IMG/VR virus record: IMGVR_UViG_3300020810_001156
Coordinates: 124,001 to 188,000 of that record
DNA: 64,000 nt
Direction: 5' to 3' (one strand)
Shown here: piece by piece, positions 39,268 to 63,648 of the stretch
How positions within the stretch are numbered: position 1 is the first letter of the stretch
How the letters are laid out: each line of letters begins with the position of its first letter
Translations under genes and position numbers: made by a program
Notes under the pieces: model-generated
What the model was told of the DNA's origin: nothing
Databases searched by the model: none
The model's input: only the letters and a program-made list of their open reading frames with translations

Positions 39268-41484
39268 ATGTCATTTCCGAATTTCTCAAATATTCAGGAT
39301 TTTGTTAGAAGTACTTTATTAAAAAGAGTAGGCAATACTGAATTATTATCAAAACTAAATCCATTTGTAAGATTGGTTTCTGGTGGTGGGGGTGGATTAG
39401 TTTTAGATTCAAATCCAGATAATAATTTGTTTAGAGCAGCTGGTAGAACATATGGTTCATCTACACAAGCTGGTAGAATAGGTACAACTTGGGGTGGTGC
39501 TGATATAAATCCCTCTGCTGGACAAGGTTATAGACCTTCTCCAATTGTAACCTCATTAGAAGTGGATGAGGGTTCTGGTAATTTGAGTAGAAAAGCAAGT
39601 TTTTCTATAACTTGTTTTACTAAAGAACAAATGGAAGTGTTAACTAGATACTTTTTAGAACCTGGTATGAGTGTGTTTATAGAATGGGGCTGGAATACAT
39701 CAAATGGTGTTAGTGGATTAACACCATTAAATGCATCTGCAATATCTAAATTTCAAAATTCATCAAATACTAATAATGTAAGGAGTAATACTGGTGGTGA
39801 ATATGATAATTACTTGGGATTTTCAACTGGTGGTGGTGTTTCTTTAGATGGTGATAAATGGACAATAAATGTAAATTGTACAGGATATACGGAATTACCA
39901 ACATATTTACTTACTACCGAAACCGGTGAACAAAAACTAAACGAATCAAAAAAATTAACATCAGCTGAACCATTTGGTTTAAATTTTATTGATTCTAAAA
40001 ATAGTAGTTTGGGTGATGAACGTTTTATGAAAATGTTTAATGAATTACCACAAACAAGACAAACTTTAGCAGTAAAGGGATTACGAAGTAAGTTTGCAGC
40101 AGATGATACTTATTTAATAAATTTTGATGATGAGGTTATTGAAGAATTAAATGATGAATCTGATGGATTTACTATTCCTGGTCTTGGTTGGGAAGTTACA
40201 CAAGGAAAAATGACAATTGATGGAAAAAAAGTCAAATTTCCAACGGGTACAAAAATAACTGGAGATGAAAGATTTATACGATTTGATGGTATGATGGATA
40301 TCATATATGAAATTGGTATTTCTGGTTATACTTTACCTGATGGTACTGAAATAACTTTTGAAATTGATTATAAAGATACTGCATGTTTAGCGTTTGAAAA
40401 AATATATAGTACTGACCCATCTAAATTATTTATACCAAATCCACAATCACCTAAATTTAATTTAGCTGCTATTAGTGCTGATAAAGGATTACCATCAATT
40501 GAAGAAATTAGAAATGCCGGTACAGTAAACAATTCACCACTTAATAAAATTAAATTTCCAAACCCAAACAATTATTCATTTACACCTTCGGATGGAGGAA
40601 AGGTAGTGACCAAAGACCCTAATCAATGGGGATACTTAAAAGATTTGTATGTTAACTTTGATTTTTTTAAAGGTATATTAGATACTAAACAATTTTATCT
40701 AAAAGATGCTCTTTATCAAATTTTAAATGGAATATCATCAGCTGTAAATGGTATGTGGGATTTTCAAATACAAGAATCAGAAGTAACATCTGGCAAGAAA
40801 AAAGTAAACAAATTAAAAATATTTGAAATGAATCTTATATCGAATGGAAAACAAACTCCTGCATATACATTTGAAATGATAGGAGCAGATTCGGTATTTA
40901 TTGATGCTAGTTTAGATTTGGATATTAGTGGTGCTAAAATGAATCAAGTTATAGGTTCAAAATTAGGAGCAGATTTAAATGGTGATTCTAAAAAAGTATC
41001 ATTATTTTCTAAAGGGAATGTACTTAATGACCAATTAGGTGTAAAATTAAAAAGAAAAAATACAAACAAAAACGACCCTAAGACTCAAACTGAGCAAGAT
41101 AAAAAAGATATAGCAGAAGCTAATTTAAATATTATGTTAGGTAAAGCTCGTTTTTATCCAAAGGTTGAAATAAATGATAAATCTAGTATGAGTCAAGACC
41201 TTTATGATTTGTGTTATTTGGGGGCTTATAAAGATGCTGGTATATTTACCGCACTAAAAACAGGAAATGATGAAGATGCTTCATCCGCAACTCCTTTAAT
41301 GCCAATTAACTTCACTTTTAAGGTTCATGGTGTTAGTGGTATAAGAAGAGGTGATATGTTTAAAGTAAATGGAGTACCATCTGTATATAATGATGGATTT
41401 TTTCAAGTATTAAGTGTTAAACATAGTATTGAGGGTATGATGTGGACAACCGAAGTAAGTGGTGGATATAGAAATAATAAATAA
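39268..41484 (+). CDS. baseplate hub protein (gp27/gpD-like)
   Basis: Follows the LysM gene; FLEPG.SVFIEWGW; C-terminal G.SGI..GD.F......FQV..VKH.I....WTT. Confidence 0.7.
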   Translation: MSFPNFSNIQDFVRSTLLKRVGNTELLSKLNPFVRLVSGGGGGLVLDSNPDNNLFRAAGRTYGSSTQAGRIGTTWGGADINPSAGQGYRPSPIVTSLEVDEGSGNLSRKASFSITCFTKEQMEVLTRYFLEPGMSVFIEWGWNTSNGVSGLTPLNASAISKFQNSSNTNNVRSNTGGEYDNYLGFSTGGGVSLDGDKWTINVNCTGYTELPTYLLTTETGEQKLNESKKLTSAEPFGLNFIDSKNSSLGDERFMKMFNELPQTRQTLAVKGLRSKFAADDTYLINFDDEVIEELNDESDGFTIPGLGWEVTQGKMTIDGKKVKFPTGTKITGDERFIRFDGMMDIIYEIGISGYTLPDGTEITFEIDYKDTACLAFEKIYSTDPSKLFIPNPQSPKFNLAAISADKGLPSIEEIRNAGTVNNSPLNKIKFPNPNNYSFTPSDGGKVVTKDPNQWGYLKDLYVNFDFFKGILDTKQFYLKDALYQILNGISSAVNGMWDFQIQESEVTSGKKKVNKLKIFEMNLISNGKQTPAYTFEMIGADSVFIDASLDLDISGAKMNQVIGSKLGADLNGDSKKVSLFSKGNVLNDQLGVKLKRKNTNKNDPKTQTEQDKKDIAEANLNIMLGKARFYPKVEINDKSSMSQDLYDLCYLGAYKDAGIFTALKTGNDEDASSATPLMPINFTFKVHGVSGIRRGDMFKVNGVPSVYNDGFFQVLSVKHSIEGMMWTTEVSGGYRNNK

Positions 41485-41486
41485 TT

Positions 41487-41840
41487 ATGAATATAGATAG
41501 ATATAAGGAAATAGCTCATTTGGGTTCTGAGTTTAATCAGACAAACATAGTAGCATATATACCTAAACCAATTGATATTGATTATAATCGAGGATATATT
41601 ACTAGATACTTTATTCAAAAATCAAATGACCCATCTTCCGTAATATACGAAATTAGAAAAAAATCTACCTCTAAGTTTTCTACTAATTCATTTTATAATG
41701 TAGTTTCATTAGATTGGAGAATTAAAGGAAGTCCATCCGAAGTAAAGAAATCAAATTCGGCATCTGTAAGAATAGCATCTCAATCAATGAGAAATATTCA
41801 ACTATATCTTCCCAACCTTTTACAATTTCATAAGAAATAA
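41487..41840 (+). CDS. conserved baseplate-associated hypothetical protein
   Basis: P...DY.RG.I.RYF...L.W.I.G motif; end of tail module. Confidence 0.55.
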   Translation: MNIDRYKEIAHLGSEFNQTNIVAYIPKPIDIDYNRGYITRYFIQKSNDPSSVIYEIRKKSTSKFSTNSFYNVVSLDWRIKGSPSEVKKSNSASVRIASQSMRNIQLYLPNLLQFHKK

Positions 41841-41872
41841 TTTGGATAATTAAAATATTTTTCTTATATTTG
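41841..41872 (+). promoter_or_regulatory. Bacteroidota-type -33/-7 promoter
   Basis: TTTG-N20-TATATTTG, ending 4 nt before ATG 41877. Confidence 0.8.
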
Positions 41873-41876
41873 TTGG

Positions 41877-43160
41877 ATGATTGTAGTAGAGTCTAACAAA
41901 GAGAAGGAAGAATTTATCAAAAGATGGGAATCTGAACCATCTATTGTAGTTCCCATATGGTGTGATTTAGAAAAACACCCGATGAACAATGAACTTGCGT
42001 TTTTGTTCGTTATGATTGGAAAATCCACCTTTATCCTCATATATAATCATATTGATGGGAAATCCCATCATTTAGACCTTTCCAAATCTACACAACCAAA
42101 ATGGGTGTGGAATAAAAAGGGCTTATTACAAAGTGGTACAAATATACAAAATATTTTTGATATATCCAATTATTACTTCTTTGAAAAGAATCAAACTATA
42201 CCCGATGAGGTACAAAATCAACCATTTATATCACATTATACCCGAATGGGTATAAGAGATGGTTTGGGAAAGATAGCACCTTTGATGAAGTGGGGAGAGT
42301 ACTTAAAATCATTTGTTGATAATATAAGTAGTACTATTCCTCCTCCCGATTTATCTCCTAAAAGTTGGATTGATGACACGATGATTCCTCTTTTATCTCA
42401 GATTGAACGATATGGTGTTCGGGTCGATGGGAGAAAATTTTTTGATAGATATCCACAAGCCACTAAACATTTAAACAACAATATCGTATATACCGAATAT
42501 AACCCATATACCATTACATCCCGTCCTTCCAACCGATTTGGGGGAATCAACTTCTCTGCTTTAAATAAAAAGGATGGTACGAGAGAAGTGTTTATTCCCA
42601 AAGATGGGCACATATTCCTACAAATGGATTATGATGCCTATCACCCCCGAATCATCGGTAAGTTGATTGATTACGATTTACCCAATACTTCCGTTCACCA
42701 ATGGTTAGCGGACCAATATGGAGTTCCATACGATGAATCTAAGGGAATCACATTCCAACTCCTTTATGGTGGGATACCCGAAGAGTTCGACTCTATTCCT
42801 TATTATAAGAAGGTTAGAGAGTACATCGATGTAATGTGGAGTAAGGCATCGGAAATGGGTTATGTATCGACTTACAACCGAAATATACCTCTCTCATCGA
42901 TAGAAGATTCAAATCCTCAAAAAGTATTCAACTATTTATTACAAGCAACTGAAACTGAGTTGAATATGAAAACAATCCAAAAAGTGTTGGAGTTTATTCA
43001 ACAAACCGATATTGAGTTGACCTTATATACTTATGATTCATTCTTATTCTCTTATCCATTAGATACTCCTAAAGAACACGCTCTAAAATTGAAACAAATA
43101 GTAGAGAGTAATGGTTTCCCTATAAAAGCTAGTTGGGGAACGGATTACTCAAAACTTTAA
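41877..43160 (+). CDS. reduced family-A polymerase-like protein
   Basis: TSRPSN, motif A DYDAYHPR, motif B KGITFQLLYG, NYLLQATE, motif C YTYDSFLF; only 427 aa. Confidence 0.8.
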   Translation: MIVVESNKEKEEFIKRWESEPSIVVPIWCDLEKHPMNNELAFLFVMIGKSTFILIYNHIDGKSHHLDLSKSTQPKWVWNKKGLLQSGTNIQNIFDISNYYFFEKNQTIPDEVQNQPFISHYTRMGIRDGLGKIAPLMKWGEYLKSFVDNISSTIPPPDLSPKSWIDDTMIPLLSQIERYGVRVDGRKFFDRYPQATKHLNNNIVYTEYNPYTITSRPSNRFGGINFSALNKKDGTREVFIPKDGHIFLQMDYDAYHPRIIGKLIDYDLPNTSVHQWLADQYGVPYDESKGITFQLLYGGIPEEFDSIPYYKKVREYIDVMWSKASEMGYVSTYNRNIPLSSIEDSNPQKVFNYLLQATETELNMKTIQKVLEFIQQTDIELTLYTYDSFLFSYPLDTPKEHALKLKQIVESNGFPIKASWGTDYSKL

Positions 43161-43188
43161 TATTTATATGATATAGGAAGATTTAAGT

Positions 43189-45285
43189 ATGAATTACTTT
43201 AAAGAATTTATAAACGATTTATTAACGGAAGTTTCGTATAGAACGGAAGGAGGTATTGTAGACCTGAAAAAATCAGAACACCTTACTATCTTATCTGAAG
43301 TATTGGATGAGTTGGGATTATCGGAAATTAAAGGTGAATTATTCCAAACCCTTTTTGAAGCCGAAACAAAATCTGATGAAGATAAAAAATACAAAGGTAT
43401 TGGTGGACAACCACCTGCTTATGTAAAATCTGGAGATTACCAAAAATGGCAATCAAATCCAGACGGATTTACAGGTCCTAAATTTAGCAAAACTGAAACT
43501 GGTAAGTATGTTCAGATTGGTAATGGTGAAGATGGAGAAGGTGGTGAAGAATCAAAATCAAAAATCTTTCAACAAAATTATGATGCACCCGATATAGATA
43601 AAGAAGAAGATAAACCAACCGAAGAAAATAAATTAGATAAAATTTCAGAAGAAAATACAAAAACTCAAAGTGATTTCATTCAAAATGGATTCAAAGCTGG
43701 AGCAGCTCCAGGTAATGCTGGTTCTATGTATAATGAAATTATGAGTTGTAAAGTTTCTGAATTCTTTTTAAATAATCCAAATGCAACTGAAGAACAAGCA
43801 TATAATCACTTAGTCCAATTAGAAGCTGGTGGTGAGTTAGCTCAACAAAATAATAAATCAAAAAATAGACCAGGTAGAATTACTTCTAATGATACAAAAG
43901 AATATGAGGGTAGTGGTGATTCAAATGAGTTGATTTCAAAAAGATTAATAGCAGTTCGTTCAGCTAAAAGAAAAGCTAAAAAAGTTGAAATAGCAAATGA
44001 ACGATTGGGATGGGAGAATACCAAAACTTTAAACTTCTTTGGTGATACTAAAGGATTAAAAGCAATGGGTGGTGTTGTAGAAAATTCTAATGGTATTGTT
44101 GACCAACGAGGAAATCCAATATCAAAAGAGGAAGCATTGGAATTGATTGCTACATCTGGTGGTGGAGAAAATCCATCTGATACTGGAACTGTAATTGTTA
44201 ACAATAGTAATGGTGTAGTTACTTTGTTATTCCATTCTGATAAAGATTCAACCGCTGCATTGATTGCACAGTCTACATTTGGGGCAGAAATAGAGCAAGG
44301 TGAAAAAAGTATAGACAAATTAGTATCAGATAAAAAACTAACACCAGAGCAAGCAAAAACTATAAAAACAACTAGAAGTGCATATGGTAGAAGAGTTGAA
44401 GAAACTGAAAACAAATTGAATGATGTAACATCAACTCCTGCTAAATTCTTAAAAGAGGGTATTGGGAATACAATCCAATCATCACAAGCGGTAAATCTCC
44501 TAAAGAACGCATCGGCTGGAGCAGACCCAGAGAAATATTGGAAATCTCAAGTTCAAAAAAGATTCTCAAATCCAAATTTATTGTTACCACCAAAAGATGG
44601 TGAACCAAGAAAAAGAGTATCTGATTACTTACCTGAAGGTGTAACCGAACCAAATGATGAACAAATGGTGGAAGCTTATATCAATTGGTGTTCGGATGAG
44701 AGTTGGGGTAAATCTGAAGAATCACTTCCAAAGAACGACCAAAAGTTAATTAATGATTTAAACACTAACTTTGGTGGACCGGATGTATTACAAGAAATTG
44801 ATAAAATCAGAAGAGAAACTATTGAAATTCAAGAACAAATGATTGATGAGTTAGATACTCAACATCAAATTGAAATTGATGGTAAATCAATCGGATTGGG
44901 TACTTATATAGAAGCTCAAAATATTTGGGAAAAAGGACACTTTACCGCAATCAACGCCGATAACGGTGTATTTAAGTATGATGGTATGTTTGAGGTAAAT
45001 AATGGTGGTGTACCAATCGGACCAGAGGAGTTAAAAGGTTGTGCAAATATTGAAGATGAGAATGATTTCATCTCTCACTTTGAAGTGGGAACTGCTGAAG
45101 AAGTTGAAGGAAAGAGTGGTGGTGTAACTGGTTCTAAAAAGTTAGTTTACGCTATTTCTAAAAAAGGTAAACGAATTCCAATTATGGAAAAAAGACAGCG
45201 TTCTAAGAATGGTATTTTGGGAAGATTGAACTCTGTATATGGTTGGAGTAGGGAAATGCAACAATGCTTTGATTCAAAGGGATAA
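43189..45285 (+). CDS. large hypothetical protein, possibly internal virion protein
   Basis: Late-type motif upstream; N-terminal L-x-E-rich segment followed by an acidic linker. Confidence 0.5.
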   Translation: MNYFKEFINDLLTEVSYRTEGGIVDLKKSEHLTILSEVLDELGLSEIKGELFQTLFEAETKSDEDKKYKGIGGQPPAYVKSGDYQKWQSNPDGFTGPKFSKTETGKYVQIGNGEDGEGGEESKSKIFQQNYDAPDIDKEEDKPTEENKLDKISEENTKTQSDFIQNGFKAGAAPGNAGSMYNEIMSCKVSEFFLNNPNATEEQAYNHLVQLEAGGELAQQNNKSKNRPGRITSNDTKEYEGSGDSNELISKRLIAVRSAKRKAKKVEIANERLGWENTKTLNFFGDTKGLKAMGGVVENSNGIVDQRGNPISKEEALELIATSGGGENPSDTGTVIVNNSNGVVTLLFHSDKDSTAALIAQSTFGAEIEQGEKSIDKLVSDKKLTPEQAKTIKTTRSAYGRRVEETENKLNDVTSTPAKFLKEGIGNTIQSSQAVNLLKNASAGADPEKYWKSQVQKRFSNPNLLLPPKDGEPRKRVSDYLPEGVTEPNDEQMVEAYINWCSDESWGKSEESLPKNDQKLINDLNTNFGGPDVLQEIDKIRRETIEIQEQMIDELDTQHQIEIDGKSIGLGTYIEAQNIWEKGHFTAINADNGVFKYDGMFEVNNGGVPIGPEELKGCANIEDENDFISHFEVGTAEEVEGKSGGVTGSKKLVYAISKKGKRIPIMEKRQRSKNGILGRLNSVYGWSREMQQCFDSKG

Positions 45286-45347: not shown

Positions 45348-45749
45348 ATGAAAACACAATTATTGTGTACATTTACTTCAAAGGATGGGTTACAAAAGAC
45401 TCTGCAAGATATCAGAGAAACTTATGTGATAGTGTATAACTATATCTATATTTTACAGAATAAATCAAACTTAGATGAACTTTACGTTACCTATAATATT
45501 AATACGGAGTTCAAACCACCACAACCTTTAGAAGATACAATACTAATACACAGAAAAAAAGAATCAAATACTCTATACACCATCAACGCACTAAATCAAT
45601 TAGTGAGAGAAGAAAATGGTGGGGTATTGGATAAGACATTCGTAATAGATTGGCAAAAATTTAGAAATTCAATAATACTTACAAATACTGAGGGTACGAA
45701 ACGTATTCAGACTCGTATCTTTGAGGTTATAGAATTTAATCAAAACTAA
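45348..45749 (+). CDS. conserved hypothetical protein
   Basis: Full ORF (MKTQLLCTFT...HRKKESNTLYTINALN) with ATATTTATA upstream. Confidence 0.6.
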   Translation: MKTQLLCTFTSKDGLQKTLQDIRETYVIVYNYIYILQNKSNLDELYVTYNINTEFKPPQPLEDTILIHRKKESNTLYTINALNQLVREENGGVLDKTFVIDWQKFRNSIILTNTEGTKRIQTRIFEVIEFNQN

Positions 45750-47149: not shown

Positions 47150-47974
47150 ATGGCACTAGATTTAAGCGCAATCAGAGGTAGACTGAACAAACTACAAAAC
47201 ACTTCAAACAGAACATCAAATCTGTGGAAACCCACACCGGGTAAACATCAAGTCAGAATCGTTCCTTACAAATTTTCTCCTGAAAATCCTTTCATTGAAC
47301 TATTCTTCCATTACAACATCAACAACAAAACGTACTTGTCTCCAAGTTCATTTGGTAGACCAGACCCAATCGTTGAGTTTGCTGAAAAGTTGAAAAGAAT
47401 GGGTGATAAAGAAGATTGGAAAGCAGCGAAGAAAATGGAGCCAAAATTAAGAACTTTTGTACCTGTACTCGTAAGAGGAGAGGAATCAGAAGGTGTTAAG
47501 TTTTGGGGATTCGGCAAAACTGTTTATCAGGAAATCTTAGGTTACATTGCTGACCCAGACTATGGTGATATTACTGACCCTAATAATGGTAGAGATATTA
47601 CTATTGAGTATGTATCAGCTGAAGATGCAGGAACTTCTTATCCTGTAACTACTATCCGTGTTAAACCAAATGTAACTCCATTGGCAGAGGGTGATACTAA
47701 CATCCAAAACTTTATGGAATCTCAAAGTAACATTACTGATATCTATTCAGAGTTATCTTATGATGAATTAAAATCAGTATTAGAAGGTTGGTTAAATCCA
47801 ACTGCTGAAGAAGGTGAAGAGAGTGTTTCTCAACAAACTCTATCAACTCCATCAGCACCTAAAACTGAAGCTACTACGGCACCAGCTGCAGCACCTTCAA
47901 ATGAGGTAACTACTGAAGAGAAAAAGAAAATGGATGATGTTGCATCAGCATTTGATGATTTATTTAACGGATAA
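47150..47974 (+). CDS. single-stranded DNA-binding protein (gp32-like)
   Basis: LWKP..G...VRIVP, GVKFWGFGKTVY, YGDITDP..GRD; acidic tail AFDDLF. Confidence 0.9.
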   Translation: MALDLSAIRGRLNKLQNTSNRTSNLWKPTPGKHQVRIVPYKFSPENPFIELFFHYNINNKTYLSPSSFGRPDPIVEFAEKLKRMGDKEDWKAAKKMEPKLRTFVPVLVRGEESEGVKFWGFGKTVYQEILGYIADPDYGDITDPNNGRDITIEYVSAEDAGTSYPVTTIRVKPNVTPLAEGDTNIQNFMESQSNITDIYSELSYDELKSVLEGWLNPTAEEGEESVSQQTLSTPSAPKTEATTAPAAAPSNEVTTEEKKKMDDVASAFDDLFNG

Positions 47975-47984
47975 TTTACACTAA

Positions 47985-49103
47985 ATGGCAAAAAAAGAAA
48001 TGGACTTAGCGGCGGAACTAGCTTCCGAGCTAAACAAAACAAACAAAGACCAGAAGGTTGCCTTCTTCTTAGGAGAGGATGATGCACCCACAAATGTGGA
48101 TGGATGGATATCAACTGGCTGTGCTATGTTAGATGTTGCCATTTCGAATCGCCCTTATGGTGGACTTCCTGTTGGTAGAATTACCGAAGTAACTGGTTTA
48201 GAACAAAGTGGAAAATCATTAGTATCTGCACACCTCCTTGCTGAAACACAAAGGCAAGGTGGTGTTGCGGTTCTAATTGATACTGAAACTGCGGTAAGTA
48301 GAGAATTCTTAGAAGCAATTGGTGTAGATGTAGCAAAACTACTTTATGTATCAGCTGATTCAGTAGAACAAATTTTCGAATTTACTGAAACAATCATTGA
48401 AAAGGTAAGAACCACACAAAAGGATAAGTTAGTAACAATCGTAGTAGATTCAGTTGCTGCAGCTTCAACTAAGAATGAGTTGGCAGCTGATTATGGTAAA
48501 GATGGATACGCTACTGATAAAGCTATTATTATCTCAAAGGCGATGAGAAAAATTACCAATTTAATTGGTAGGCAAAAAATCACCTTAGTATTCACTAATC
48601 AATTAAGACAGAAAATGAACGCTATGTTTGGTGACCCGTGGACTACTTCTGGAGGAAAAGCTCTTGCATTCCATGCATCAGTTAGACTTCGTTTGAAGAA
48701 TATGGGACAAATCAAACAAAAAGTCAATGGGCAAGATAAAACCATTGGTATGAAAGTTAGATGTCAGGTTATCAAAAACCGAATGGGACCACCACTTCGA
48801 GCAGCTGATTTCGAAATATTCTTTGATAGAGGAATCGATAACTTCGGTTCTTGGTTAGGAGTAATGAAGGAAAATAAGTTGGTGAAGCAGGCTGGTGCAT
48901 GGTACACTTACATTGATACGGAAACTGGAGAGGAAATTAAATTCCAATCCAAAGATTTCATTGATTTGATGGAAGAAAGAGAAGATGTTAAAGAACAAAT
49001 CTACAAAAAGATTTGCGAAGCAACTATCTTACAATACAAATCAGATTCTAAAGATATCGAAGCACATGAGTTAGATACTGAGGGAGCTGAGGTGGTAGAA
49101 TAA
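47985..49103 (+). CDS. recA: RecA/UvsX-like recombinase
   Basis: GGLPVGRITE.TGLEQSGKS Walker A; IVVDSVAA; FTNQLR; TTSGGKALAFHASVRL; KNRMGPP. Confidence 0.93.
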   Translation: MAKKEMDLAAELASELNKTNKDQKVAFFLGEDDAPTNVDGWISTGCAMLDVAISNRPYGGLPVGRITEVTGLEQSGKSLVSAHLLAETQRQGGVAVLIDTETAVSREFLEAIGVDVAKLLYVSADSVEQIFEFTETIIEKVRTTQKDKLVTIVVDSVAAASTKNELAADYGKDGYATDKAIIISKAMRKITNLIGRQKITLVFTNQLRQKMNAMFGDPWTTSGGKALAFHASVRLRLKNMGQIKQKVNGQDKTIGMKVRCQVIKNRMGPPLRAADFEIFFDRGIDNFGSWLGVMKENKLVKQAGAWYTYIDTETGEEIKFQSKDFIDLMEEREDVKEQIYKKICEATILQYKSDSKDIEAHELDTEGAEVVE

Positions 49104-49119
49104 AAAGTAATAATAAGTT

Positions 49120-49365
49120 ATGAGTAAATTAAAAGAAATGTTACAAGCATCTGCGAAAGCAGATAGAGCTAAAGCACTCCTTACTTTGGAGTTGTTGGAG
49201 AACAAAGCAGTGGGTATTGGAGACCACTCAACTGAGGATTTTTATAAAAACGCAGAAGAGGCATTATCCAAACTATGTGATGCAGAAGATAGATTACAAA
49301 CTATCGATAATTATTTCGGTGAAGGTATTCACAATTATTTTTCTGATTCAACAACAACTACATAA
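49120..49365 (+). CDS. hypothetical protein
   Basis: 81 aa, VGIGDH motif; coupled to the next gene by a TAATG overlap. Confidence 0.6.
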   Translation: MSKLKEMLQASAKADRAKALLTLELLENKAVGIGDHSTEDFYKNAEEALSKLCDAEDRLQTIDNYFGEGIHNYFSDSTTTT

Positions 49366-50411
49366 TGAAAGACCTCTATAAAAACATTCTAAACGAAGTT
49401 GAGCAGGAACGAGAAACGAATCACCTTCGTGAGAGAAATAGTAGAGTTCTGATTATTGATGGACTAAACACCTTCATCCGAAGTTGGACAACCAACCCCA
49501 CAATGAATGAGGATGGTGACCATACGGGTGGGGTGATTGGCTCCCTCAAATCTATTGGATACCAAATTAGAGAATTTAATCCAACCCGATGTATCGTAAC
49601 CTTTGATGGTAAAGATGGTTCTCAATCCAGAAAGAAAATCCACGAAGGATATAAAGCTGGTAGAGAAAAGAACCGATTTAGAGTAAACCGTCAATATCAA
49701 GGTATGATGGATGAGGAAGAGGAAAGATTATCTATGAAACAACAATTCATTTGGTTAAATGATATTTTAGATTATCTACCTGTTCAGACTATGATTTATG
49801 ATGGAATTGAAGCAGATGATACAATAGCATATCTAACTAAACACAATGAATCGGATTTAGGTAATGAAGTTGTTATTGTTTCAACTGATAAAGATTTTCT
49901 TCAGTTAGTTTCTGATAAAGTAAAAGTATTTTCACCTACTAAAAAGAAATTATACGATAGACAGATGGTGTTTGATGAGTATGGAATTTGGCCTGAGAAT
50001 CTTTTATTATATAGAACATTGGATGGTGATAAATCAGATAACATACCAGGCATCAAAGGATGTGGTATTAAAACTCTTTTAAAGAGGTTTCCTGAACTTT
50101 CTGAGGATAGATTGATAACACATGAGGAGTTCTTCCAATTGTGTGAAGATAAGCAAGGTAAAATCAAATTATATGATGATATCTTAAAAGCAAAAGACCA
50201 ACTTCTTATGAATAAGAGGTTAATGGAGTTAGATGAACCCCATATCCCAACAAATCAGAAGTTAAAAATCTTAGATAGATTTAATGAAGATGATGTTGAA
50301 TTTAAGAAATTAGATTTTCTTAGAGTTGGACAAAAATACAAAATTCTCCAAAATTGGAGAGATATAAATGATTGGTTACATTCAACCTTTCAAAATATTA
50401 TTACAAAATAA
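49365..50411 (+). CDS. 5'-3' exonuclease / RNase H (FEN-like)
   Basis: IIDGLN, FDG, YKAGR, EADD, STDKDFLQL, GDKSDNIPGIKG.G.KT. Confidence 0.93.
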   Translation: MKDLYKNILNEVEQERETNHLRERNSRVLIIDGLNTFIRSWTTNPTMNEDGDHTGGVIGSLKSIGYQIREFNPTRCIVTFDGKDGSQSRKKIHEGYKAGREKNRFRVNRQYQGMMDEEEERLSMKQQFIWLNDILDYLPVQTMIYDGIEADDTIAYLTKHNESDLGNEVVIVSTDKDFLQLVSDKVKVFSPTKKKLYDRQMVFDEYGIWPENLLLYRTLDGDKSDNIPGIKGCGIKTLLKRFPELSEDRLITHEEFFQLCEDKQGKIKLYDDILKAKDQLLMNKRLMELDEPHIPTNQKLKILDRFNEDDVEFKKLDFLRVGQKYKILQNWRDINDWLHSTFQNIITK

Positions 50412-50412
50412 T

Positions 50413-50443
50413 TTTGATATATCACAAATTTTTCTTATATTTG
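50413..50443 (+). promoter_or_regulatory. Bacteroidota-type promoter upstream of helicase
   Basis: TTTG-N19-TATATTTG. Confidence 0.7.
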
Positions 50444-50468
50444 TGAAATCAAATTAGGTTATAGGTAA

Positions 50469-51827
50469 ATGCAAAATATAGATACTCTTTCAAAATACGG
50501 ACAATCCTTTCAAACGAAGGTACTTTCTTCTTTGATTACGGATGTTCGTTTATTGGATACTCTTAGTGAGATTATACATCCAAAGTTTTTTGAAGCTGAG
50601 GCTAATAAATGGATAGCAGAGGAGATTGTTTCATATTACGATGAATTTAAGAAATCTCCAACATTAGACGTTTTTAAATCCGAAGTTTCGAAGTTAGATG
50701 ATAGAGGGTTTCAGAAAAGTGTAGTAGAGCAATTAAAATTAGTTTTTACCAAAGTTGGTGATTCTGATTTGGATTATGTAAAGAAAGAGTTTTCTTCATT
50801 TTGCATCAACCAAAACCTAAAACAAGCTATTGTTAGTTCAGTTGATTTACTAAAAGCTGGTAACTATGATAGAATCAAAGATTTAGTAGATAAAGCAATG
50901 AAGGTAGGAGTGGATTCAGATATGGGACACGATTACCTTTTAGATTTTGAAGAAAGAACTAACGAAGTTGATAGAAGTACAGTTCCAACTGGTTGGGATT
51001 GTATTAATGAATTGATGGATGGTGGTTTGGGACCTGGCGAATTAGGAGTAGCAGTAGCACCTTCTGGTGTTGGTAAAACTTGGGTACTATGTGCAATCGG
51101 AGCAGCAGCTGTTAAGAGAGGATTAAATGTAGTACATTACTCTTTGGAATTATCAGAACATTATGTGGGACAGAGATACGATACTGTATTTACACAAATC
51201 CCATCAGCAGATGTGAAAGATAAGAAAGAAGAAGTAAAAGAGAAAATCAATAGATTGAGTGGAAAACTTCTTATTAAGTATTTCCCACCAAAAGGTATAT
51301 CTGCTAAAAAATTAGAATCCCATATTGAGAAGATGACAGCAGCAGGAAATAAACCTGATTTGATAATTATTGATTATGCTGATTTGTTATTATCTCACAC
51401 TAATAAATCCGATTCAACCTATGGTGAGCAAGGTGGTGTTTACATTGAGTTGAGAGGTATTAGTGGTGAATTGGGTATTCCTATTTGGACAGCATCCCAA
51501 ACCAATCGTTCAGCAATTGATTCTGAAGTTATTGAAGCGGATAAGGTAGCAGATTCCTACGCTAAGGTAATGAACGCTGATTTCATTATGAGTATCAGTA
51601 GAAAGAGTAAGGATAAATTGAACAATACTGCAAGATTCCATATTATGAAAAACCGATTTGGACCCGATGGAATTACTTTCCCATCTAAGATGGATACCAA
51701 TACTGGATTCATTGAGGTTTATGATGGCAATTCATCAGATGGAATTATTACACAAAAAGAATCTGCAAATGGAGAACAAATGGAGAAAAAGTTACTTCAT
51801 AAAAAGTATGTTGAAAACTTTGGGTAA
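50469..51827 (+). CDS. replicative DnaB/gp41-like helicase
   Basis: GGLGPGEL...APSGVGKT, YSLEL, IIDYADL, WTASQ.NR, KNRFG. Confidence 0.93.
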   Translation: MQNIDTLSKYGQSFQTKVLSSLITDVRLLDTLSEIIHPKFFEAEANKWIAEEIVSYYDEFKKSPTLDVFKSEVSKLDDRGFQKSVVEQLKLVFTKVGDSDLDYVKKEFSSFCINQNLKQAIVSSVDLLKAGNYDRIKDLVDKAMKVGVDSDMGHDYLLDFEERTNEVDRSTVPTGWDCINELMDGGLGPGELGVAVAPSGVGKTWVLCAIGAAAVKRGLNVVHYSLELSEHYVGQRYDTVFTQIPSADVKDKKEEVKEKINRLSGKLLIKYFPPKGISAKKLESHIEKMTAAGNKPDLIIIDYADLLLSHTNKSDSTYGEQGGVYIELRGISGELGIPIWTASQTNRSAIDSEVIEADKVADSYAKVMNADFIMSISRKSKDKLNNTARFHIMKNRFGPDGITFPSKMDTNTGFIEVYDGNSSDGIITQKESANGEQMEKKLLHKKYVENFG

Positions 51828-57133: not shown

Positions 57134-57146
57134 TTTAGTATATTTG
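57115..57146 (+). promoter_or_regulatory. Bacteroidota-type promoter
   Basis: TTTG-N20-TATATTTG. Confidence 0.75.
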
Positions 57147-59995: not shown

Positions 59996-61126
59996 ATGAG
60001 AGTATTAGTAATACCTAATTATACAAATTTTGGACAAGTAAAGGATATCAATAGGGATTCGTTCCTATTGGTATTCAAGTCCTTTTTAGATAACACACAA
60101 ATTGGAAAGGAGTGGGAGTGGGTCTTACCATATCCAGGTGGTGGAATGCACAATCATCCAGGTATTATAAACACTTTCGAATATCCGAATGTAACGATGT
60201 TACAAATGGACCCGATAGATTGTTTTCCAGCTAAGATGAGGGTTGATTATCCTCACAAATTTTTTGAGAAGGTTATTGAGAAATATGAAGGAAAATTTAA
60301 TCTCGTTTGGAGCCATTTACCTGAGTGGACAAATTTATTTAAGATATCAAGAATCTACAATAAATTACAACCTATAATTGGCTACTGCCATTGGAGCGAA
60401 ATACCCGAAAATGGTGCTAGAACGGAAAACTCATTTTGGACAAACATTAGAGGTATTTTACAAATGGAAGTTTGTGGTGTAAACTCTGAATATCAAAAAA
60501 GTGTTATTCTTAAAAACGCAGCTTTAGATTTCCAACCACATATTGTTGAAAAGTTGGATAAGATTATTCAACCTTGGTATTTAGGATGTGATACAGCTAC
60601 TCCTTCAAATGGATATGATGATAAAACAATCGTATTCAATCATAGAGAAGGTGTTTATACTGGTTCTAAATGGTTCTTTGAAACTATGGATGAGTTGTGG
60701 AAAGAAAGGCAGGATTTCAAAGTTTATACTACTTTGAAAGAAATGGGTAAACCTTATACAAAGTATATTGGAGCAGCTGATAGAAAAGTGTACCTAAGTC
60801 AATTATCAAAAGCACATTTTGGTGTTGGTACTTTCCAAGGTTATTCAGCTTGGAGTATGAGTACAACTGATGGATTTTCAGTAGGTGTACCATATTTACT
60901 ACCAAATGGTTTTTGTTATCCTGAAATGGTAGGTGATGATTATCCACTTCTTTATAATGGTAAGAAAGAATTTAAAGAAATGGTAATAAAGTTATTAGAT
61001 GGTGATATTCCAAGACCTGATGTAACTCACCTTGCTCAATCTCTCCTATGGGAATCACAAATTGAGAAATATTGGAATGTTGAGAAAAATTTTATTGGTA
61101 ACCTAAGAAAAGAATTTAACGATTAA
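59996..61126 (+). CDS. GT-B fold glycosyltransferase
   Basis: MRVLVI start; IVFNHR; WSMSTTDG..VGVPYLLP...YPEM donor-binding region. Confidence 0.8.
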   Translation: MRVLVIPNYTNFGQVKDINRDSFLLVFKSFLDNTQIGKEWEWVLPYPGGGMHNHPGIINTFEYPNVTMLQMDPIDCFPAKMRVDYPHKFFEKVIEKYEGKFNLVWSHLPEWTNLFKISRIYNKLQPIIGYCHWSEIPENGARTENSFWTNIRGILQMEVCGVNSEYQKSVILKNAALDFQPHIVEKLDKIIQPWYLGCDTATPSNGYDDKTIVFNHREGVYTGSKWFFETMDELWKERQDFKVYTTLKEMGKPYTKYIGAADRKVYLSQLSKAHFGVGTFQGYSAWSMSTTDGFSVGVPYLLPNGFCYPEMVGDDYPLLYNGKKEFKEMVIKLLDGDIPRPDVTHLAQSLLWESQIEKYWNVEKNFIGNLRKEFND

Positions 61127-63648
61127 TGTACCAAAACTGCTACTACCAAAGAGAAAAGAATCTCGTTCATATTTGGGATGATAAAAAAGGATACTTCAAT
61201 TTTCCTTATACTCGATACGCATACGAAAAGGCTGATAGAGGTGAGTTTACAACTCTTTATGGAGATAAAGTAACCAAAATCTACAAATTCACAAAAGATG
61301 ACCCAAATCTTTTCGAATCAGATGTACCTGAAACTACGAGAGTTTTGGTAGATACTTATACTGATTCGGATTTACCATCAGAAGGACACACTATTCTTAC
61401 TTATGATATTGAGTGTGAGATGGAGAGCGGTTTACCAAATCCAGAAGAAGCAGAGAATGAATTAACTTCAATCGCACTACATGATTCAGTAACCAATCAA
61501 TATTGGGTTTTGGTTATGGATAAAAGTGGTGATATGTTGGAAAGAAAAACTGATAAAGCAATTGTGATTCCATTTAAGCAGGAAGAACAAATGTTATTAA
61601 AGTTTTTAGAGTTATATGAGATGATTAATCCATCGATTGTAACTGGTTGGAATATTGATTACTTCGATACACCAATGTTATACAATCGTATCAAACGATT
61701 GTTGGGTAAAAGAGCCGCAAATCGCTTATCACCTATTGGTGAGTGTTTTTGGTCTCCTTATCGTAAAAGATTCTTTATGGCTGGTGTATCGTACTTAGAT
61801 TACTTAGCATTATACAAAAACTTCACATACTCGGAATTAGATTCTTATAGATTAGATTCCATTTCTATGAGAGAGTTGAATAGAAAAAAGATTGAATATG
61901 ATGGAAACTTAGACCAATTATTCAGAGATGATATTGAGAAGTTTATAGAGTATAACTTAGTGGATGTTGAACTTGTAGTAGAATTAGATAACAAACTTCA
62001 GTTCATTGATACCGCTCGAGGTATTTGTCACGCTGGGCATGTACCTTACGAAGATTTCGTTTATTCTTCAAAGTATTTGGAAGGAGCACTTTTATGTTAC
62101 CTAAAAAGAAAGGGTATTGTTGCACCTAACAAACCAGCTGATAGAAGAGAACGAATGGAAGCTCTTAAAGAGAATAAAGAAGAGAAGTTTATCGGAGCAT
62201 ATGTAAAAGCACCAATTGTTGGTAAATATGATTGGATATATGATTTGGATTTAACTTCCCTATATCCATCTATTATTATGACTATCAATATTTCACCTGA
62301 AACTAAGATGGGTAAAATTGAAGATTGGAGTGCTGAGGATTATGTTAAAGATAAAAGGGATAGTTGGGTTATCAATGGTGATACAATCACACAAGAAAAT
62401 CTAAAAAAGTTTTTTGAAAGAAGTAAGTTTTCAGTTGCATCAAATGGTGTTCTTTATAGAACGGATAAAGTGGGTTGTATTCCTGATATTTTGGACTTGT
62501 GGTTCTCTCAGAGGGTTGAGTTCAAAAACAAAATGAAAGAATATGGAAACAGTGGAGAAAAAGAAAAATACGAATGGTATAAGAAACGTCAGTTGGTTCA
62601 GAAAATTCTACTTAATTCTTTATATGGTGTGCTTGGCCTTCCTGCCTTTAGGTTCTATGATGTTGATAATGCTACCGCTGTTACCACAACGGGACAGACA
62701 GTTATTAAATCAACTGCGGATATGGCTAACATCAAATACAATAAGGAGCTTGGTACTCCTAATGCTGACTCTAATATATACATTGATACTGATTCTGTAT
62801 TTTTCTCAGCAGCTCCACTTTTAGACCATAGGATTCCAAATTGGAAAGATAATGAGCAAGATACTATTGCTGGATTCGTAAATGATATTGCAGGTGAAAT
62901 GCAAGATTATCTAAATGATTTTTATGATATTCTTGCTGAAAAAGTATTCAATGTAGATAAGGATAAACATCGATTTGAGATTAAGAAAGAATATGTTTCT
63001 AAATCAGGTATTTGGATTGCTAAGAAACGATATGCACAATGGATTATTTCCGATAATGGTGTACCTGTTGATAAGTTGGATGTAAAAGGATTAGATGTTG
63101 TTCGTTCATCATATCCAGCAGCATTTAGAAAGTTTATGAGTGAGGTTCTGATTGAAATCCTTAGAGGTGATACTGAAGAACAACTTACGAATAAAGTGTA
63201 TGATTTTAAAAAGAATCTACCAAATATGGATGTGGTGAAGATTGCAAAAGCTGGAGCTGTGAAAAACTTATCAAAGTATATGCCAAAGAAAAAGAATCAA
63301 ACAGCTATGTTCCAATTTCCATCTGGTTGTCCGGCGCATGTTAAAGCAGCAATTGCATATAATCAATTACTAAAACACTTTGGGGTGGAAAATCAATACG
63401 AACCCCTAAAGGATGGTGATAAGATTAAGTGGGTTTATCTAAAACAAAATCCATATGGGTTGGATGGTGTAGCTATGAATGGTTACAATGACCCACCTCA
63501 GATTATGGAACTGATTAACACTTATATCAATCACGATAAAATCTTCGAAAGAGAACTTCTAAAAAAATTAGAAGATTTCTACGGAGCATTAGATTGGGGA
63601 GAAGTTTTATCCTCAACAAAAACAGCTGAGAAATTTTTCTCATTTTAA
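61126..63648 (+). CDS. family B DNA polymerase (gp43-like)
   Basis: YDIE, TGWNIDYFD, YN..D exonuclease motifs; DLTSLYPSII, KILLNSLYG, YIDTDS, KKRY. Confidence 0.97.
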   Translation: MYQNCYYQREKNLVHIWDDKKGYFNFPYTRYAYEKADRGEFTTLYGDKVTKIYKFTKDDPNLFESDVPETTRVLVDTYTDSDLPSEGHTILTYDIECEMESGLPNPEEAENELTSIALHDSVTNQYWVLVMDKSGDMLERKTDKAIVIPFKQEEQMLLKFLELYEMINPSIVTGWNIDYFDTPMLYNRIKRLLGKRAANRLSPIGECFWSPYRKRFFMAGVSYLDYLALYKNFTYSELDSYRLDSISMRELNRKKIEYDGNLDQLFRDDIEKFIEYNLVDVELVVELDNKLQFIDTARGICHAGHVPYEDFVYSSKYLEGALLCYLKRKGIVAPNKPADRRERMEALKENKEEKFIGAYVKAPIVGKYDWIYDLDLTSLYPSIIMTINISPETKMGKIEDWSAEDYVKDKRDSWVINGDTITQENLKKFFERSKFSVASNGVLYRTDKVGCIPDILDLWFSQRVEFKNKMKEYGNSGEKEKYEWYKKRQLVQKILLNSLYGVLGLPAFRFYDVDNATAVTTTGQTVIKSTADMANIKYNKELGTPNADSNIYIDTDSVFFSAAPLLDHRIPNWKDNEQDTIAGFVNDIAGEMQDYLNDFYDILAEKVFNVDKDKHRFEIKKEYVSKSGIWIAKKRYAQWIISDNGVPVDKLDVKGLDVVRSSYPAAFRKFMSEVLIEILRGDTEEQLTNKVYDFKKNLPNMDVVKIAKAGAVKNLSKYMPKKKNQTAMFQFPSGCPAHVKAAIAYNQLLKHFGVENQYEPLKDGDKIKWVYLKQNPYGLDGVAMNGYNDPPQIMELINTYINHDKIFERELLKKLEDFYGALDWGEVLSSTKTAEKFFSF

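What the first reader, a model, noticed from the sequence alone, without database searches (positions are those of the whole stretch)
41841..43160. Second, minimal PolA-fold enzyme with steric-gate loss and an RNAP-like motif C
Seen: a full PolB exists at 61126, yet this 427-aa PolA-like protein is also present. Motif A reads DYDAYHPR against canonical DYSQIELR, so the Glu that excludes rNTPs (Klenow E710) aligns to His. Motif C reads TYDSF, closer to T7 RNAP IHDSF than to PolA VHDE. The motif B Arg is missing while K...F...YG is kept. The promoter -7 box ends 4 nt before the ATG, implying a near-leaderless early mRNA. Inference: it is not the replicase and may be a primase-like or RNA-synthesising enzyme, or a late-transcription factor. 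No primase or gp55 sigma appears in this window, though they may lie elsewhere in the genome.
Basis: partly seen in the sequence, partly recalled or inferred. Interest (0 to 1): 0.75.

Follow-up and report, generated by a model that had tools for sequence, protein, structure and literature searches.

The report
Compact accessory PolA (divPolA1) in phage
This gene encodes a stripped-down, Klenow-like DNA polymerase of the recently described "divPolA1" family, which large phages carry beside their main replicase; an invariant histidine replaces the glutamate that normally excludes ribonucleotides, and no one has yet tested what that does.

Summary
Window 41877-43160 (+) encodes a 427-aa PolA-fold protein in a 252.6-kb salt-marsh phage that also has a T4-type PolB, sliding clamp and clamp loader.

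Profile alignment to Klenow gives:
- D251=D705, H256=E710
- Y285=R754, K289=K758, F293=F762, Y297=Y766
- Y386-D387-S388 = H881-D882-E883

The His is present in 133 of 134 cluster representatives and in 80 of 80 IMG/VR loci.

The protein is not a new kind. It belongs to divPolA1 (Yutin et al. 2024, Virol J 21:200), defined by a truncated thumb, a degenerate 3'-5' exonuclease domain, a regular DNA polymerase elsewhere in the genome, and conserved replication genes downstream. That paper does not discuss the sugar-pocket changes.

"Not the replicase" is supported. "Primase-like, RNA-synthesising or late transcription factor" is not:
- A DnaG primase lies elsewhere in the genome.
- The model matches Klenow at Z 23.5 and T7 RNAP at only Z 10.7.
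- The family profile matches E. coli Pol I but not T7 RNAP.
- The residues that read the minor groove of the primer-template duplex are invariant.
- The gene heads an SSB-RecA-FEN-DnaB module behind a host-type promoter.

Best reading: a distributive, non-proofreading, primer-dependent accessory DNA polymerase whose sugar selectivity may be altered. Biochemistry is needed.

The parts
41841..41872 (+). Bacteroidetes-type promoter-like element: TTTG, 20 nt, TATATTTG. It ends 4 nt before the ATG, which predicts a leaderless or near-leaderless transcript.
   Evidence: Read directly from the sequence. The motif is enriched on the coding strand genome-wide: 26 against 10, with about 4-9 expected, and 17 of 26 lie within 60 nt of an ORF start. 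TSS not mapped. One RNA-library contig runs across the element, 41445-41886.
41877..43160 (+). divPolA1 gene: a 427-aa compact Klenow-like polymerase.
   Evidence: ORF. Pfam and PHROG matches. 4436 90%-identity clusters and 1007 50%-identity clusters of relatives. AF2 pLDDT 95.5. Klenow Z 23.5 and Bst large fragment Z 27.5. Homologous to Flavobacterium phage immuto gene 1, E 1.5e-46.
41877..42356 (+). N-terminal DEDD-exonuclease-like domain (residues 1 to about 160). The canonical DxE motif is not conserved in the family, but H34, H58, [DE]60 and D95 are.
   Evidence: Model residues 1-180 match exonuclease ExnV1 (Z 12.4), RNase D (Z 11.5) and Rrp6. Column counts: D30 in 92 of 134, E32 in 14 of 134, H34 in 127, H58 in 127, acidic residue at 60 in 133, D95 in 130.
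42429..42491 (+). Thumb remnant (about residues 185-205): two short helices where Klenow has about 75-95 residues.
   Evidence: The profile alignment jumps from Pol I 558 to 632. The model has only helices 185-191 and 193-198 here.
42627..42650 (+). Motif A, DYDAYHPR: catalytic D251, with H256 at the steric-gate position (Klenow E710).
   Evidence: for the register. H in 133 of 134 representatives and 80 of 80 loci.
42729..42770 (+). Motif B (O-helix), YDESKGITFQLLYG: Y285 in place of R754; K289, F293, Y297 and G298 kept.
43026..43046 (+). Motif C, YTYDSFL: Y386 in place of H881, catalytic D387, S388 in place of E883.
45348..45749 (+). Conserved 133-aa protein of unknown fold, always found between divPolA1 and the SSB gene.
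   Evidence: Present in 40 of 40 loci that have at least 7 kb downstream. 20 invariant columns. AF2 pLDDT 93. No PDB or named AFDB match.
47150..51827 (+). Conserved downstream module: gp32-like SSB (47150-47974), RecA/UvsX (47985-49103), 5'-3' exonuclease FEN (49365-50411), DnaB helicase (50469-51827).
   Evidence: PHROG and Pfam matches. Synteny in IMG/VR loci with at least 7 kb downstream: SSB 35 of 40, RecA 33, FEN 30, DnaB 27. Same order in immuto and Mel-JY01.
61126..63648 (+). Regular T4-type family B DNA polymerase, the probable replicase. A gp45-like clamp follows from 63713 and runs off the end of the window.
   Evidence: PHROG_262 E 5.7e-188 and Pfam PolB plus exonuclease domain. 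Clamp, phrog_223 E 7e-14. Clamp loader, phrog_168 E 2e-79, at genome 189639-190586.

Best explanation
The gene encodes a member of the divPolA1 family: a catalytically competent, primer- and template-dependent polymerase reduced to the Klenow core. It has no functional thumb tip and no canonical proofreading site.

It is not the genome replicase. That role belongs to the PolB, clamp and clamp-loader set 18 kb downstream. This enzyme works as a distributive accessory polymerase of the SSB, RecA/UvsX, FEN and DnaB module that it heads. Likely tasks are short-patch synthesis such as gap filling after primer removal together with the separately encoded FEN (a split Pol I arrangement), or extension of RNA primers or of RecA-made D-loop 3' ends.

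It is expressed with the replication genes from a host-sigma-type promoter.

Its nucleotide pocket is remodelled in a conserved way: I709 to Y/F, E710 to H, R754 to Y, H881 to Y and E883 to S/A/G. Its sugar or triphosphate handling therefore probably differs from Klenow's.

Shown: fold, motif mapping, conservation, synteny and co-occurrence with a regular DNA polymerase. Inferred: activity, low processivity, lack of proofreading, and the specific task.
For: Fold: AF2 pLDDT 95.5. Klenow Z 23.5 with 419 of 427 residues aligned, and all top matches are PolA DNA polymerases.

Catalytic and DNA-contact residues, in 134 diverse representatives:
- Invariant: D705, D882, K758, R668 and Q849 equivalents.
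- Nearly invariant: Y766 133, N845 130, F762 131, H734 117.

Thumb: Pol I residues about 559-631 have no counterpart.

Exonuclease: the DxE glutamate column is Glu in only 14 of 134.

Regular polymerase in the same genome:
- PolB, gp45-like clamp and clamp loader here.
- 9 of 9 divPolA1 records hold a second full-size DNA polymerase, either PolB or PolA.
- In immuto the second enzyme is a 778-aa PolA with the canonical gate Glu and intact exonuclease motifs.

Synteny: a conserved 133-aa protein, then SSB, RecA, FEN and DnaB, holds across 40 loci.

Affinity: the family profile is closest to bacterial Pol I, at 50 bits, against about 0 bits for T7 DNA polymerase.

Promoter: a host-type element of the same kind precedes this gene, DnaB, and the ORF after PolB (the gp45-like clamp).

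Literature: Yutin et al. 2024 reached the same general reading for divPolA1.
Against: - No member has been assayed, so activity, processivity and substrate are all inferred.
- An invariant His at the gate, a small residue at E883 and loss of R754 are not what a plain dNTP gap-filler needs. They point to some other specificity.
- H34, H58, [DE]60 and D95 are strongly conserved in the "dead" exonuclease domain. This hints at a function the explanation does not cover.
- Yutin et al. note that divPolA1, not the regular polymerase, has the stable replication-gene context.
- T4-type replisomes do not need an extra polymerase for Okazaki maturation.
Confidence: 0.6

Rival explanations
1. A ribonucleotide-using enzyme. 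The Glu-to-His and Glu883-to-Ser changes would open the pocket to a 2'-OH, so the protein would synthesise RNA: as a primase-like primer maker, a primer-dependent RNA extender, or a phage RNA polymerase.
For: - The gate Glu is absent in all 134 representatives, and position 883 is always S, A or G, as in the HDS of T7 RNAP.
- I709, whose mutation affects rNTP use in Taq and Klenow (my recollection), is Y or F.
- No gp55-type sigma, single-subunit RNAP or Rpb1-type RNAP was detected in the complete 252.6-kb genome.
- Yutin et al. raised an RNAP role for the sister group divPolA2.
Against: - DnaG primases are present in this genome and in immuto.
- T7 RNAP matches at Z 10.7 and mitochondrial RNAP at Z 11.0, against 20-23.5 for PolA DNA polymerases.
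- The profile has no detectable similarity to T7 RNAP.
- There is no N-terminal promoter-binding domain or specificity loop. The N-terminus is a DEDD-exonuclease fold.
- His is bulky and invariant, and its only variant is Phe, the steric-gate type of RT and Y-family polymerases. It could itself act as a gate.
- RNAPs keep the motif B Arg that is lost here.
- The minor-groove readers R668 and Q849 are invariant.
- The negative RNAP and sigma searches are weak. Two of the control searches matched nothing in any genome.
Confidence: 0.13
2. divPolA1 is the conserved core replicase of this phage group, made processive by partner proteins such as the 133-aa protein or the clamp. The swappable regular PolA, PolB or PolC would serve repair or another role.
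For: - divPolA1 has the stable replication-gene context, while the regular polymerase changes family between relatives.
- A strictly co-occurring 133-aa protein of unknown fold lies next to it.
Against: - A truncated thumb and no conserved proofreading site are poor fits for copying 160-480-kb genomes.
- Here the PolB sits directly beside its clamp and clamp loader, as in T4.
- No record was found with divPolA1 as the only polymerase.
Confidence: 0.1
3. A specialised polymerase for chemically modified DNA. It would copy across, or insert opposite, hypermodified bases that stall the main replicase.
For: - This genome carries two Mom-like DNA-modification genes and a MazG.
- Immuto carries a full 7-deazaguanine (DpdA/Que) pathway.
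- The active site is remodelled and the thumb is open.
Against: - Mom and DpdA modifications are made after replication, and they differ between the phages, while divPolA1 is the same.
- The changed residues line the sugar and triphosphate pocket, not the nascent base-pair pocket.
- No modification gene is in conserved synteny with divPolA1.
Confidence: 0.1
4. A catalytically inactive scaffold: a polymerase-fold protein kept only for protein or DNA binding in the replisome.
For: E710, E883 and R754, all important for Klenow catalysis, are replaced.
Against: Both metal-binding aspartates, K758, Y766, R668 and Q849 are invariant or nearly so across clusters that share only about 30% identity. 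Relics do not show that pattern.
Confidence: 0.05

Closest known systems
divPolA1 (Yutin, Tolstoy, Mutz, Wolf, Krupovic, Koonin 2024, Virol J 21:200; Flavobacterium phage vB_FspM_immuto gene 1 and 13 related genomes)
   Same: Homologous to the named member, E 1.5e-46. About 430 aa, palm residues kept, thumb truncated, exonuclease-like domain degenerate. A regular DNA polymerase lies elsewhere in the genome. Replication genes downstream are conserved.
   Different: - Host genome is 252.6 kb, against the 155-190 kb described. Relatives here reach 218 kb and 484 kb.
- The family is far larger than 14 genomes: at least 463 50%-identity clusters at E 1e-30 or better, and more than 574 IMG/VR contigs.
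- The paper does not mention the gate His, the E883 or R754 replacements, the conserved His/Asp set in the exonuclease-like domain, or the 133-aa neighbour.
[quoted passage not shown]
   Same: Same two-domain architecture and fold: Z 23.5-27.5 with 400-419 of 427 residues aligned. Same catalytic Asp pair, K758, F762, Y766, R668, N845, Q849 and H734. Best sequence match of the family profile. A separate FEN gene nearby mirrors the third domain of Pol I.
   Different: About 180 residues shorter, with the thumb tip and parts of the fingers deleted. E710 to H, I709 to Y/F, R754 to Y, H881 to Y, E883 to S. An extra invariant Glu (E359) three residues after the Q849 equivalent. Exonuclease DxE not conserved. 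Below the Pfam gathering score.
T7-type single-subunit RNA polymerases (T7, mitochondrial, N4 vRNAP)
   Same: Shared right-hand PolA-type palm and fingers. The motif C D-S-F string resembles T7 RNAP HDSF. No acidic residue at the gate.
   Different: Z only 7.6-11 over about 260-275 residues. No profile similarity. No promoter-recognition N-terminal domain. His rather than a small residue at the gate. Motif B Arg missing. Tyr rather than His before the catalytic Asp.
divPolA2 (same paper; barbaviruses)
   Same: A second, divergent PolA encoded beside a regular PolB, with no proofreading.
   Different: divPolA2 has an unrelated N-terminal globular domain, a variable gene neighbourhood, and RNAPs among its top structural hits. 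The protein here has an exonuclease-fold N-terminus, fixed synteny and DNA polymerase top hits.
Accessory bacterial PolA subfamilies APEX and CHEAP (Czernecki et al. 2023, NAR 51:4488)
   Same: Non-replicative PolAs with a "broken" thumb and a sealed or inactive exonuclease site, coexisting with a canonical polymerase.
   Different: Those are cellular, full-length, and described without a change at the steric-gate position. No sequence relationship was tested here.

Membership tests
divPolA1 (Yutin et al. 2024) | Sequence homology to the type members (Flavobacterium phage immuto gene 1) | tested here: met
   blastp 26.6% identity over 448 aa, E 1.5e-46. tblastn E 2e-40. Same motif A/B/C variants in immuto, Mel-JY01 and LR756508.
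divPolA1 (Yutin et al. 2024) | Palm domain with the main catalytic residues conserved | tested here: met
   D251 and D387 in 134 of 134, K289 in 134 of 134, Y297 in 133 of 134.
divPolA1 (Yutin et al. 2024) | Truncated thumb | tested here: met
   Pol I residues about 559-631 have no counterpart in the profile alignment. The model has two short helices at 185-198.
divPolA1 (Yutin et al. 2024) | 3'-5' exonuclease domain present but with its catalytic aspartates replaced | tested here: inconclusive
   The DEDD-exonuclease fold is confirmed, Z 12.4 to ExnV1. In the family the DxE Glu column is Glu in 14 of 134 and no YxxxD is conserved. This particular protein does read D30-L-E32 and has D95. No residue-level structural superposition was available.
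divPolA1 (Yutin et al. 2024) | Co-occurs with a regular family A, B or C DNA polymerase | tested here: met
   840-aa PolB at 61126-63648. 9 of 9 records have a second polymerase.
divPolA1 (Yutin et al. 2024) | Conserved replication genes downstream | tested here: met
   SSB, RecA, FEN and DnaB downstream here and in 27-35 of 40 loci.
Canonical family A DNA polymerase (Pfam PF00476; Pol I type) | Passes the curated family score | tested here: not met
   30.8 bits against a cut-off of 34.3. In the genome search 21.2 bits, not over the cut-off.
Canonical family A DNA polymerase (Pfam PF00476; Pol I type) | Motif A steric-gate Glu (Klenow E710), motif B Arg (R754) and motif C HDE | tested here: not met
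   His, Tyr and Y-D-S respectively.
Canonical family A DNA polymerase (Pfam PF00476; Pol I type) | Klenow-type fold with two catalytic Asp, K758, Y766, R668 and Q849 | tested here: met
   Z 23.5-27.5. Residues invariant or nearly so.
T7-like single-subunit RNA polymerase | Sequence or profile membership, and an N-terminal promoter-binding domain | tested here: not met
   No hmmsearch match with filters off. PF00940 not found, though that control matched nothing anywhere. The N-terminus is an exonuclease fold.
T7-like single-subunit RNA polymerase | rNTP-selective synthesis and de novo initiation | not testable with these tools
   Needs enzyme assays.
DNA primase (DnaG/TOPRIM or AEP) | TOPRIM or AEP catalytic fold | tested here: not met
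   The fold is PolA. The genome's DnaG-type primase is a different gene at genome 70346-71284, phrog_47 E 4.5e-48.

The most novel reading that the evidence does not exclude
divPolA1 enzymes are natural PolA-fold polymerases with relaxed or inverted sugar selectivity. The invariant His/Ser pocket would let them extend primers with ribonucleotides, or extend RNA primers as their dedicated substrate. That would make them a widespread living intermediate between Pol I-type DNA polymerases and T7-type RNA polymerases, and a fixed extra component of a large group of phage replisomes.
Probability: 0.12. Interest if true: 0.85.

Novelty: new member of a known kind. Interest (0 to 1): 0.42.

Why it matters
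The family is very common in environmental phages. It has thousands of sequence clusters, from salt-marsh, marine and freshwater samples, in genomes from about 130 to 480 kb. Its gene context stays fixed while the main replicase is swapped between polymerase families. Even so, no member has been assayed.

The glutamate at the steric gate is one of the most constant residues of family A DNA polymerases. A whole family with an invariant His there, plus matched changes at four other pocket residues, is a natural experiment in nucleotide selectivity.

Its small size (about 430 aa) makes it an easy target for enzymology and possibly for polymerase engineering. If it is only a gap-filler, it still shows that these phages keep a split, minimal Pol I beside a T4-type replisome.

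Tried and rejected
- Primase substitute: rejected. A DnaG-type primase is present in this genome and in immuto.
- Specific kinship with T7 RNAP: rejected. No profile match, and Z 10.7 against 23.5 for Klenow.
- divPolA1 as the only polymerase in Flavobacterium phage immuto: it looked so when PF00136 found nothing there. The annotation and PF00476 then showed a 778-aa regular PolA.
- Aligning the exonuclease-like domain to Klenow by sequence profile: failed. hhalign and HMMER cover only the polymerase domain, so the exonuclease catalytic residues could not be mapped one to one.
- Identifying the conserved 133-aa neighbour: no Pfam, PHROG, PDB-sequence, Foldseek-PDB, AFDB or ESM Atlas lead.
- Mapping the transcript start from public metatranscriptomes: only assembled contigs are held. 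They show the gene is present in RNA libraries and that one contig reads across the promoter, but they give no 5' ends.
- Search for a gp55-type sigma, T7-type RNAP or multisubunit RNAP in the genome: nothing found. A 12.7-bit Sigma70_r2 hit at genome 47105-47215 was not confirmed by Pfam or PHROG scans. These negatives are weak.
- Literature search for Glu-to-His steric-gate mutants (E710H, E615H, E658H, E480H, E2335H): no paper.
- E. coli-type promoter and terminator scan of 41300-43400: not enriched, and no terminator.
Full report
**1. What is in the sequence**

Window 41877-43160 (+) is an ORF of 427 aa. The preceding gene stops at 41840. The 36-nt spacer reads TTTG (41841-41844), 20 nt, TATATTTG (41865-41872), TTGG, ATG.

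The window is bases 124001-188000 of a 252,603-bp IMG/VR virus record. The record is 33% G+C, rated 100% complete by CheckV, and has 274 of 279 called ORFs on one strand.

The protein matches Pfam DNA_pol_A weakly (E 2e-7, 30.8 bits, cut-off 34.3). It also matches PHROG_17 "DNA polymerase" (E 1.3e-13).

It is a real, conserved gene. There are 4436 90%-identity clusters with E 0.001 or better. There are 1007 50%-identity clusters, 463 of them at E 1e-30 or better, nearly all 420-460 aa long. More than 574 IMG/VR contigs carry it.

**2.

A profile of the family aligned to Klenow by HMMER and by hhalign (probability 97.6%) gives one register:

| This protein | Klenow |
|---|---|
| R216 | R668 |
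| D251 | D705 |
| Y255 | I709 |
| H256 | E710 |
| R258 | R712 |
| H274 | H734 |
| Y285 | R754 |
| K289 | K758 |
| F293 | F762 |
| Y297 | Y766 |
| N352 | N845 |
| Q356 | Q849 |
| Y386 | H881 |
| D387 | D882 |
| S388 | E883 |

Counts in 134 cluster representatives of at least 380 aa:
- D251, D387, K289, R216, Q356, Y386 and E359: 134 of 134.
- H256: 133 of 134, the one exception being Phe.
- Y297: 133. F293: 131.
- Position 388: S 114, A 16, G 4, never acidic.
- Position 285: Y 103, I 13, R 5.
- Position 255: Y 84, F 46.

All 80 IMG/VR loci have His at the gate. So do Flavobacterium phage immuto gene 1, Microcystis phage Mel-JY01 and the 484-kb uncultured phage LR756508.

The Glu-to-His change is therefore not decay. 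It is a fixed, selected feature, and part of a coordinated remodelling of five residues that line the nucleotide and primer-terminus pocket.

The full PolB at 61126-63648 is confirmed (PHROG_262, E 5.7e-188).

**3. Structure**

AlphaFold2 with a 52-sequence alignment gives pLDDT 95.5 and pTM 0.93.

- Foldseek puts Klenow first, at E 3.7e-20 and TM 0.73-0.76 by query.
- VIA-align gives Z 27.5 to the Bst large fragment, with about 400 of 427 residues aligned.
- In the search that does not rely on Foldseek, Klenow scores Z 23.5, with 419 of 427 residues aligned at 3.3 Å.
- Every other family A DNA polymerase follows at Z 12-23.
- Single-subunit RNA polymerases come far lower and cover only about 260-275 residues: yeast mitochondrial RNAP 11.0, T7 RNAP 10.7, human mitochondrial RNAP 8.7, N4 mini-vRNAP 7.6.

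Residues 1-180 match DEDD exonucleases on their own: ExnV1 12.4, RNase D 11.5, also Rrp6 and WRN.

The profile alignment skips Pol I residues about 559-631. The model has only two short helices there, 185-191 and 193-198. So the thumb tip is gone.

In the exonuclease-like domain the DxE glutamate column is Glu in only 14 of 134 sequences, and no YxxxD is conserved. H34 (127), H58 (127), an acidic residue at 60 (133) and D95 (130) are strongly conserved. I could not test whether they cluster in space.

**4. Genomic setting**

Downstream lie:
- an unknown 698-aa protein;
- a 133-aa protein;
- an endolysin;
- a gp32-type SSB;
- RecA/UvsX;
- a 5'-3' exonuclease (FEN);
- DnaB;
- a SET-domain protein and MazG;
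- ribonucleotide reductase;
- two Mom-like proteins;
- two unknown proteins;
- PolB.

A gp45-like clamp (phrog_223, E 7e-14) and a clamp loader (phrog_168, E 2e-79) follow PolB, as in T4.

Elsewhere in the genome there is a DnaG-type primase at 70346-71284. It is 40% identical to the immuto primase and matches phrog_47 at E 4.5e-48. An SbcCD-like nuclease lies beside it.

Across 80 IMG/VR loci the order is conserved: divPolA1, the 133-aa protein, SSB, RecA, FEN, DnaB. Among the 40 loci with at least 7 kb downstream, the counts are 40, 35, 33, 30 and 27 for the five downstream genes. Mel-JY01 and immuto show the same order.

Of 9 larger records with the gene, 8 have an 838-857-aa PolB and 1 (immuto) has a 778-aa PolA. 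None has PolC, and none lacks a second polymerase.

The regular PolA of immuto keeps DYTSLE (the gate Glu), the motif B Arg and Lys, HDQ, and intact exonuclease motifs. The unusual pocket is therefore specific to the small enzyme.

**5. Promoter**

TTTG-N20-TAnnTTTG is the consensus I recall for Bacteroidetes primary-sigma promoters (-33 TTTG, -7 TAnnTTTG). That is my knowledge, not a tool result.

In this genome the pattern TTTG-N18-22-TAnnTTTG occurs 26 times on the coding strand and 10 on the other, against about 4-9 in Markov shuffles. Seventeen of the 26 lie within 60 nt upstream of an ORF start. These include the starts of DnaB and of the gene after PolB.

Only at this gene is the gap 4 nt. 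The N-terminus (M-x-I/V-I/V-E) is conserved across the family, so the start codon is right. A transcript from this promoter would be leaderless or nearly so.

This is unverified. The phage occurs in at least 13 salt-marsh DNA runs and 6 metatranscriptomes. RNA-library contigs cover the gene at 100% identity and one runs from 41445 to 41886. Contigs give no 5' ends and cannot exclude DNA carry-over.

**6. What it is**

The family was described in 2024 as divPolA1 (Yutin et al., Virol J 21:200; preprint "Jumping DNA polymerases in bacteriophages"). That description covers:
- 14 phages around Flavobacterium phage immuto, with genomes of 155-190 kb;
- a regular polymerase of family A, B or C in each genome;
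- conserved replication genes downstream;
- conserved palm residues, a truncated thumb and an inactivated exonuclease.

The window protein is homologous to the type member (E 1.5e-46). It meets five of the six features clearly. The exonuclease feature is inconclusive, because this particular protein reads D30-x-E32 and I had no residue-level superposition.

The paper contains no mention of the steric gate or of ribonucleotides. No later paper uses the family name. No paper on Glu-to-His gate mutants was found.

**7. How it most likely works**

The invariant metal ligands, the O-helix Lys, Phe and Tyr, and the minor-groove readers R668, N845 and Q849 argue for an active enzyme that binds a primer-template duplex as Pol I does.

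The missing thumb tip argues for distributive synthesis. The degenerate DxE argues against canonical proofreading.

The phage has a complete T4-type PolB holoenzyme. The small enzyme keeps its place at the head of the SSB, RecA, FEN and DnaB block even where the replicase family differs. The best-supported role is therefore an accessory polymerase of the lagging-strand or recombination machinery. Candidate tasks are short-gap filling together with the separate FEN (a split, minimal Pol I) or extension of RNA-primer or D-loop 3' ends (confidence 0.6).

The family profile is closest to bacterial Pol I rather than to phage PolAs. That fits a Pol I origin.

This reading does not explain the conserved His/Ser/Tyr pocket. 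The pocket suggests altered sugar or triphosphate handling.

**8. Rivals**

- An RNA-synthesising enzyme (0.13) is not excluded. No gp55 sigma or phage RNAP was detected, but these are weak negatives. This reading has no positive support, and the fold ranking, the profile result, the primase genes and the His itself argue against it. The His is bulky, with Phe as its only variant.
- True replicase (0.10), modified-DNA specialist (0.10) and inactive scaffold (0.05) are set out in the rival section.

**9. Verdict**

The object is a new member of a known but uncharacterised family, in a larger genome than those described.

The new points here are:
- the invariance of the gate His and the matched pocket changes;
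- the much larger size and spread of the family;
- the strictly linked 133-aa protein;
- the conserved His/Asp set in the exonuclease-like domain.

Interest is moderate, because the decisive step is simple biochemistry on a small protein.

Noticed in passing
window 45348-45749 (+): A 133-aa protein is present downstream of divPolA1 in 40 of 40 loci that have enough flank, and it is more conserved than divPolA1 itself (40-91% identity, 20 invariant columns including an HRKK stretch). The AF2 model is confident (pLDDT 93), but there is no Pfam, PHROG, PDB or named AFDB match. It may be a partner of the polymerase or of the replisome.
   Followed up: yes
window 41877-42356 (residues 1-160 of the target): The supposedly dead exonuclease-like domain keeps H34, H58, an acidic residue at 60, D95 and K81 in 116-133 of 134 representatives, while the canonical DxE Glu column varies. 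This could be a different metal site or an interaction surface. Spatial clustering could not be checked.
   Followed up: partly
window 56366-57133 and 57310-58116 (+): Two tandem Mom-like DNA-modification genes (Pfam Mom, E 1e-43 and 2e-45) suggest that the phage DNA carries a Mom-type adenine modification. The relative immuto instead carries a DpdA/Que 7-deazaguanine pathway.
   Followed up: no
window 2219-15991 and 18082-29682 (+); also genome 110811-125297 and 75880-84288: Giant ORFs of 4590, 3866, 4828 and 2802 aa lie in the structural half of the genome. They were not analysed.
   Followed up: no
window 41841-41872, 50413-50443, 57115-57146, 63649-63680: A repeated 31-32-nt promoter-like element of the form TTTGGATAATTAAAA...TATATTTG (Bacteroidetes -33/-7 type) points to a Bacteroidota host. 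Metatranscriptome contigs share just this element, joined to other flanks.
   Followed up: partly
window 52874-54154 (+): The ribonucleotide reductase small subunit carries an N-terminal ATP-cone (Pfam E 2.2e-19). That domain is normally found on the large subunit. A SET-domain protein (52159-52569) and a MazG (52566-52877) lie just upstream.
   Followed up: no
window 58223-59983 and 59996-61126 (+): Two ORFs of 586 and 376 aa directly upstream of PolB have no Pfam or PHROG match.
   Followed up: no
G000 whole genome; weak hit at genome 47105-47215: No gp55-type late sigma, T7-type RNAP or Rpb1-type RNAP was detected in the complete genome. A 12.7-bit Sigma70_r2 hit in a 239-aa ORF was not confirmed. 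How late genes are transcribed remains open.
   Followed up: partly
L105 (LR756508.1 240922-242259): A 484-kb uncultured "huge phage" encodes a divPolA1 homologue (30% identity, with DYDAFH and YDA motifs). This extends the family well beyond the published genome-size range.
   Followed up: partly
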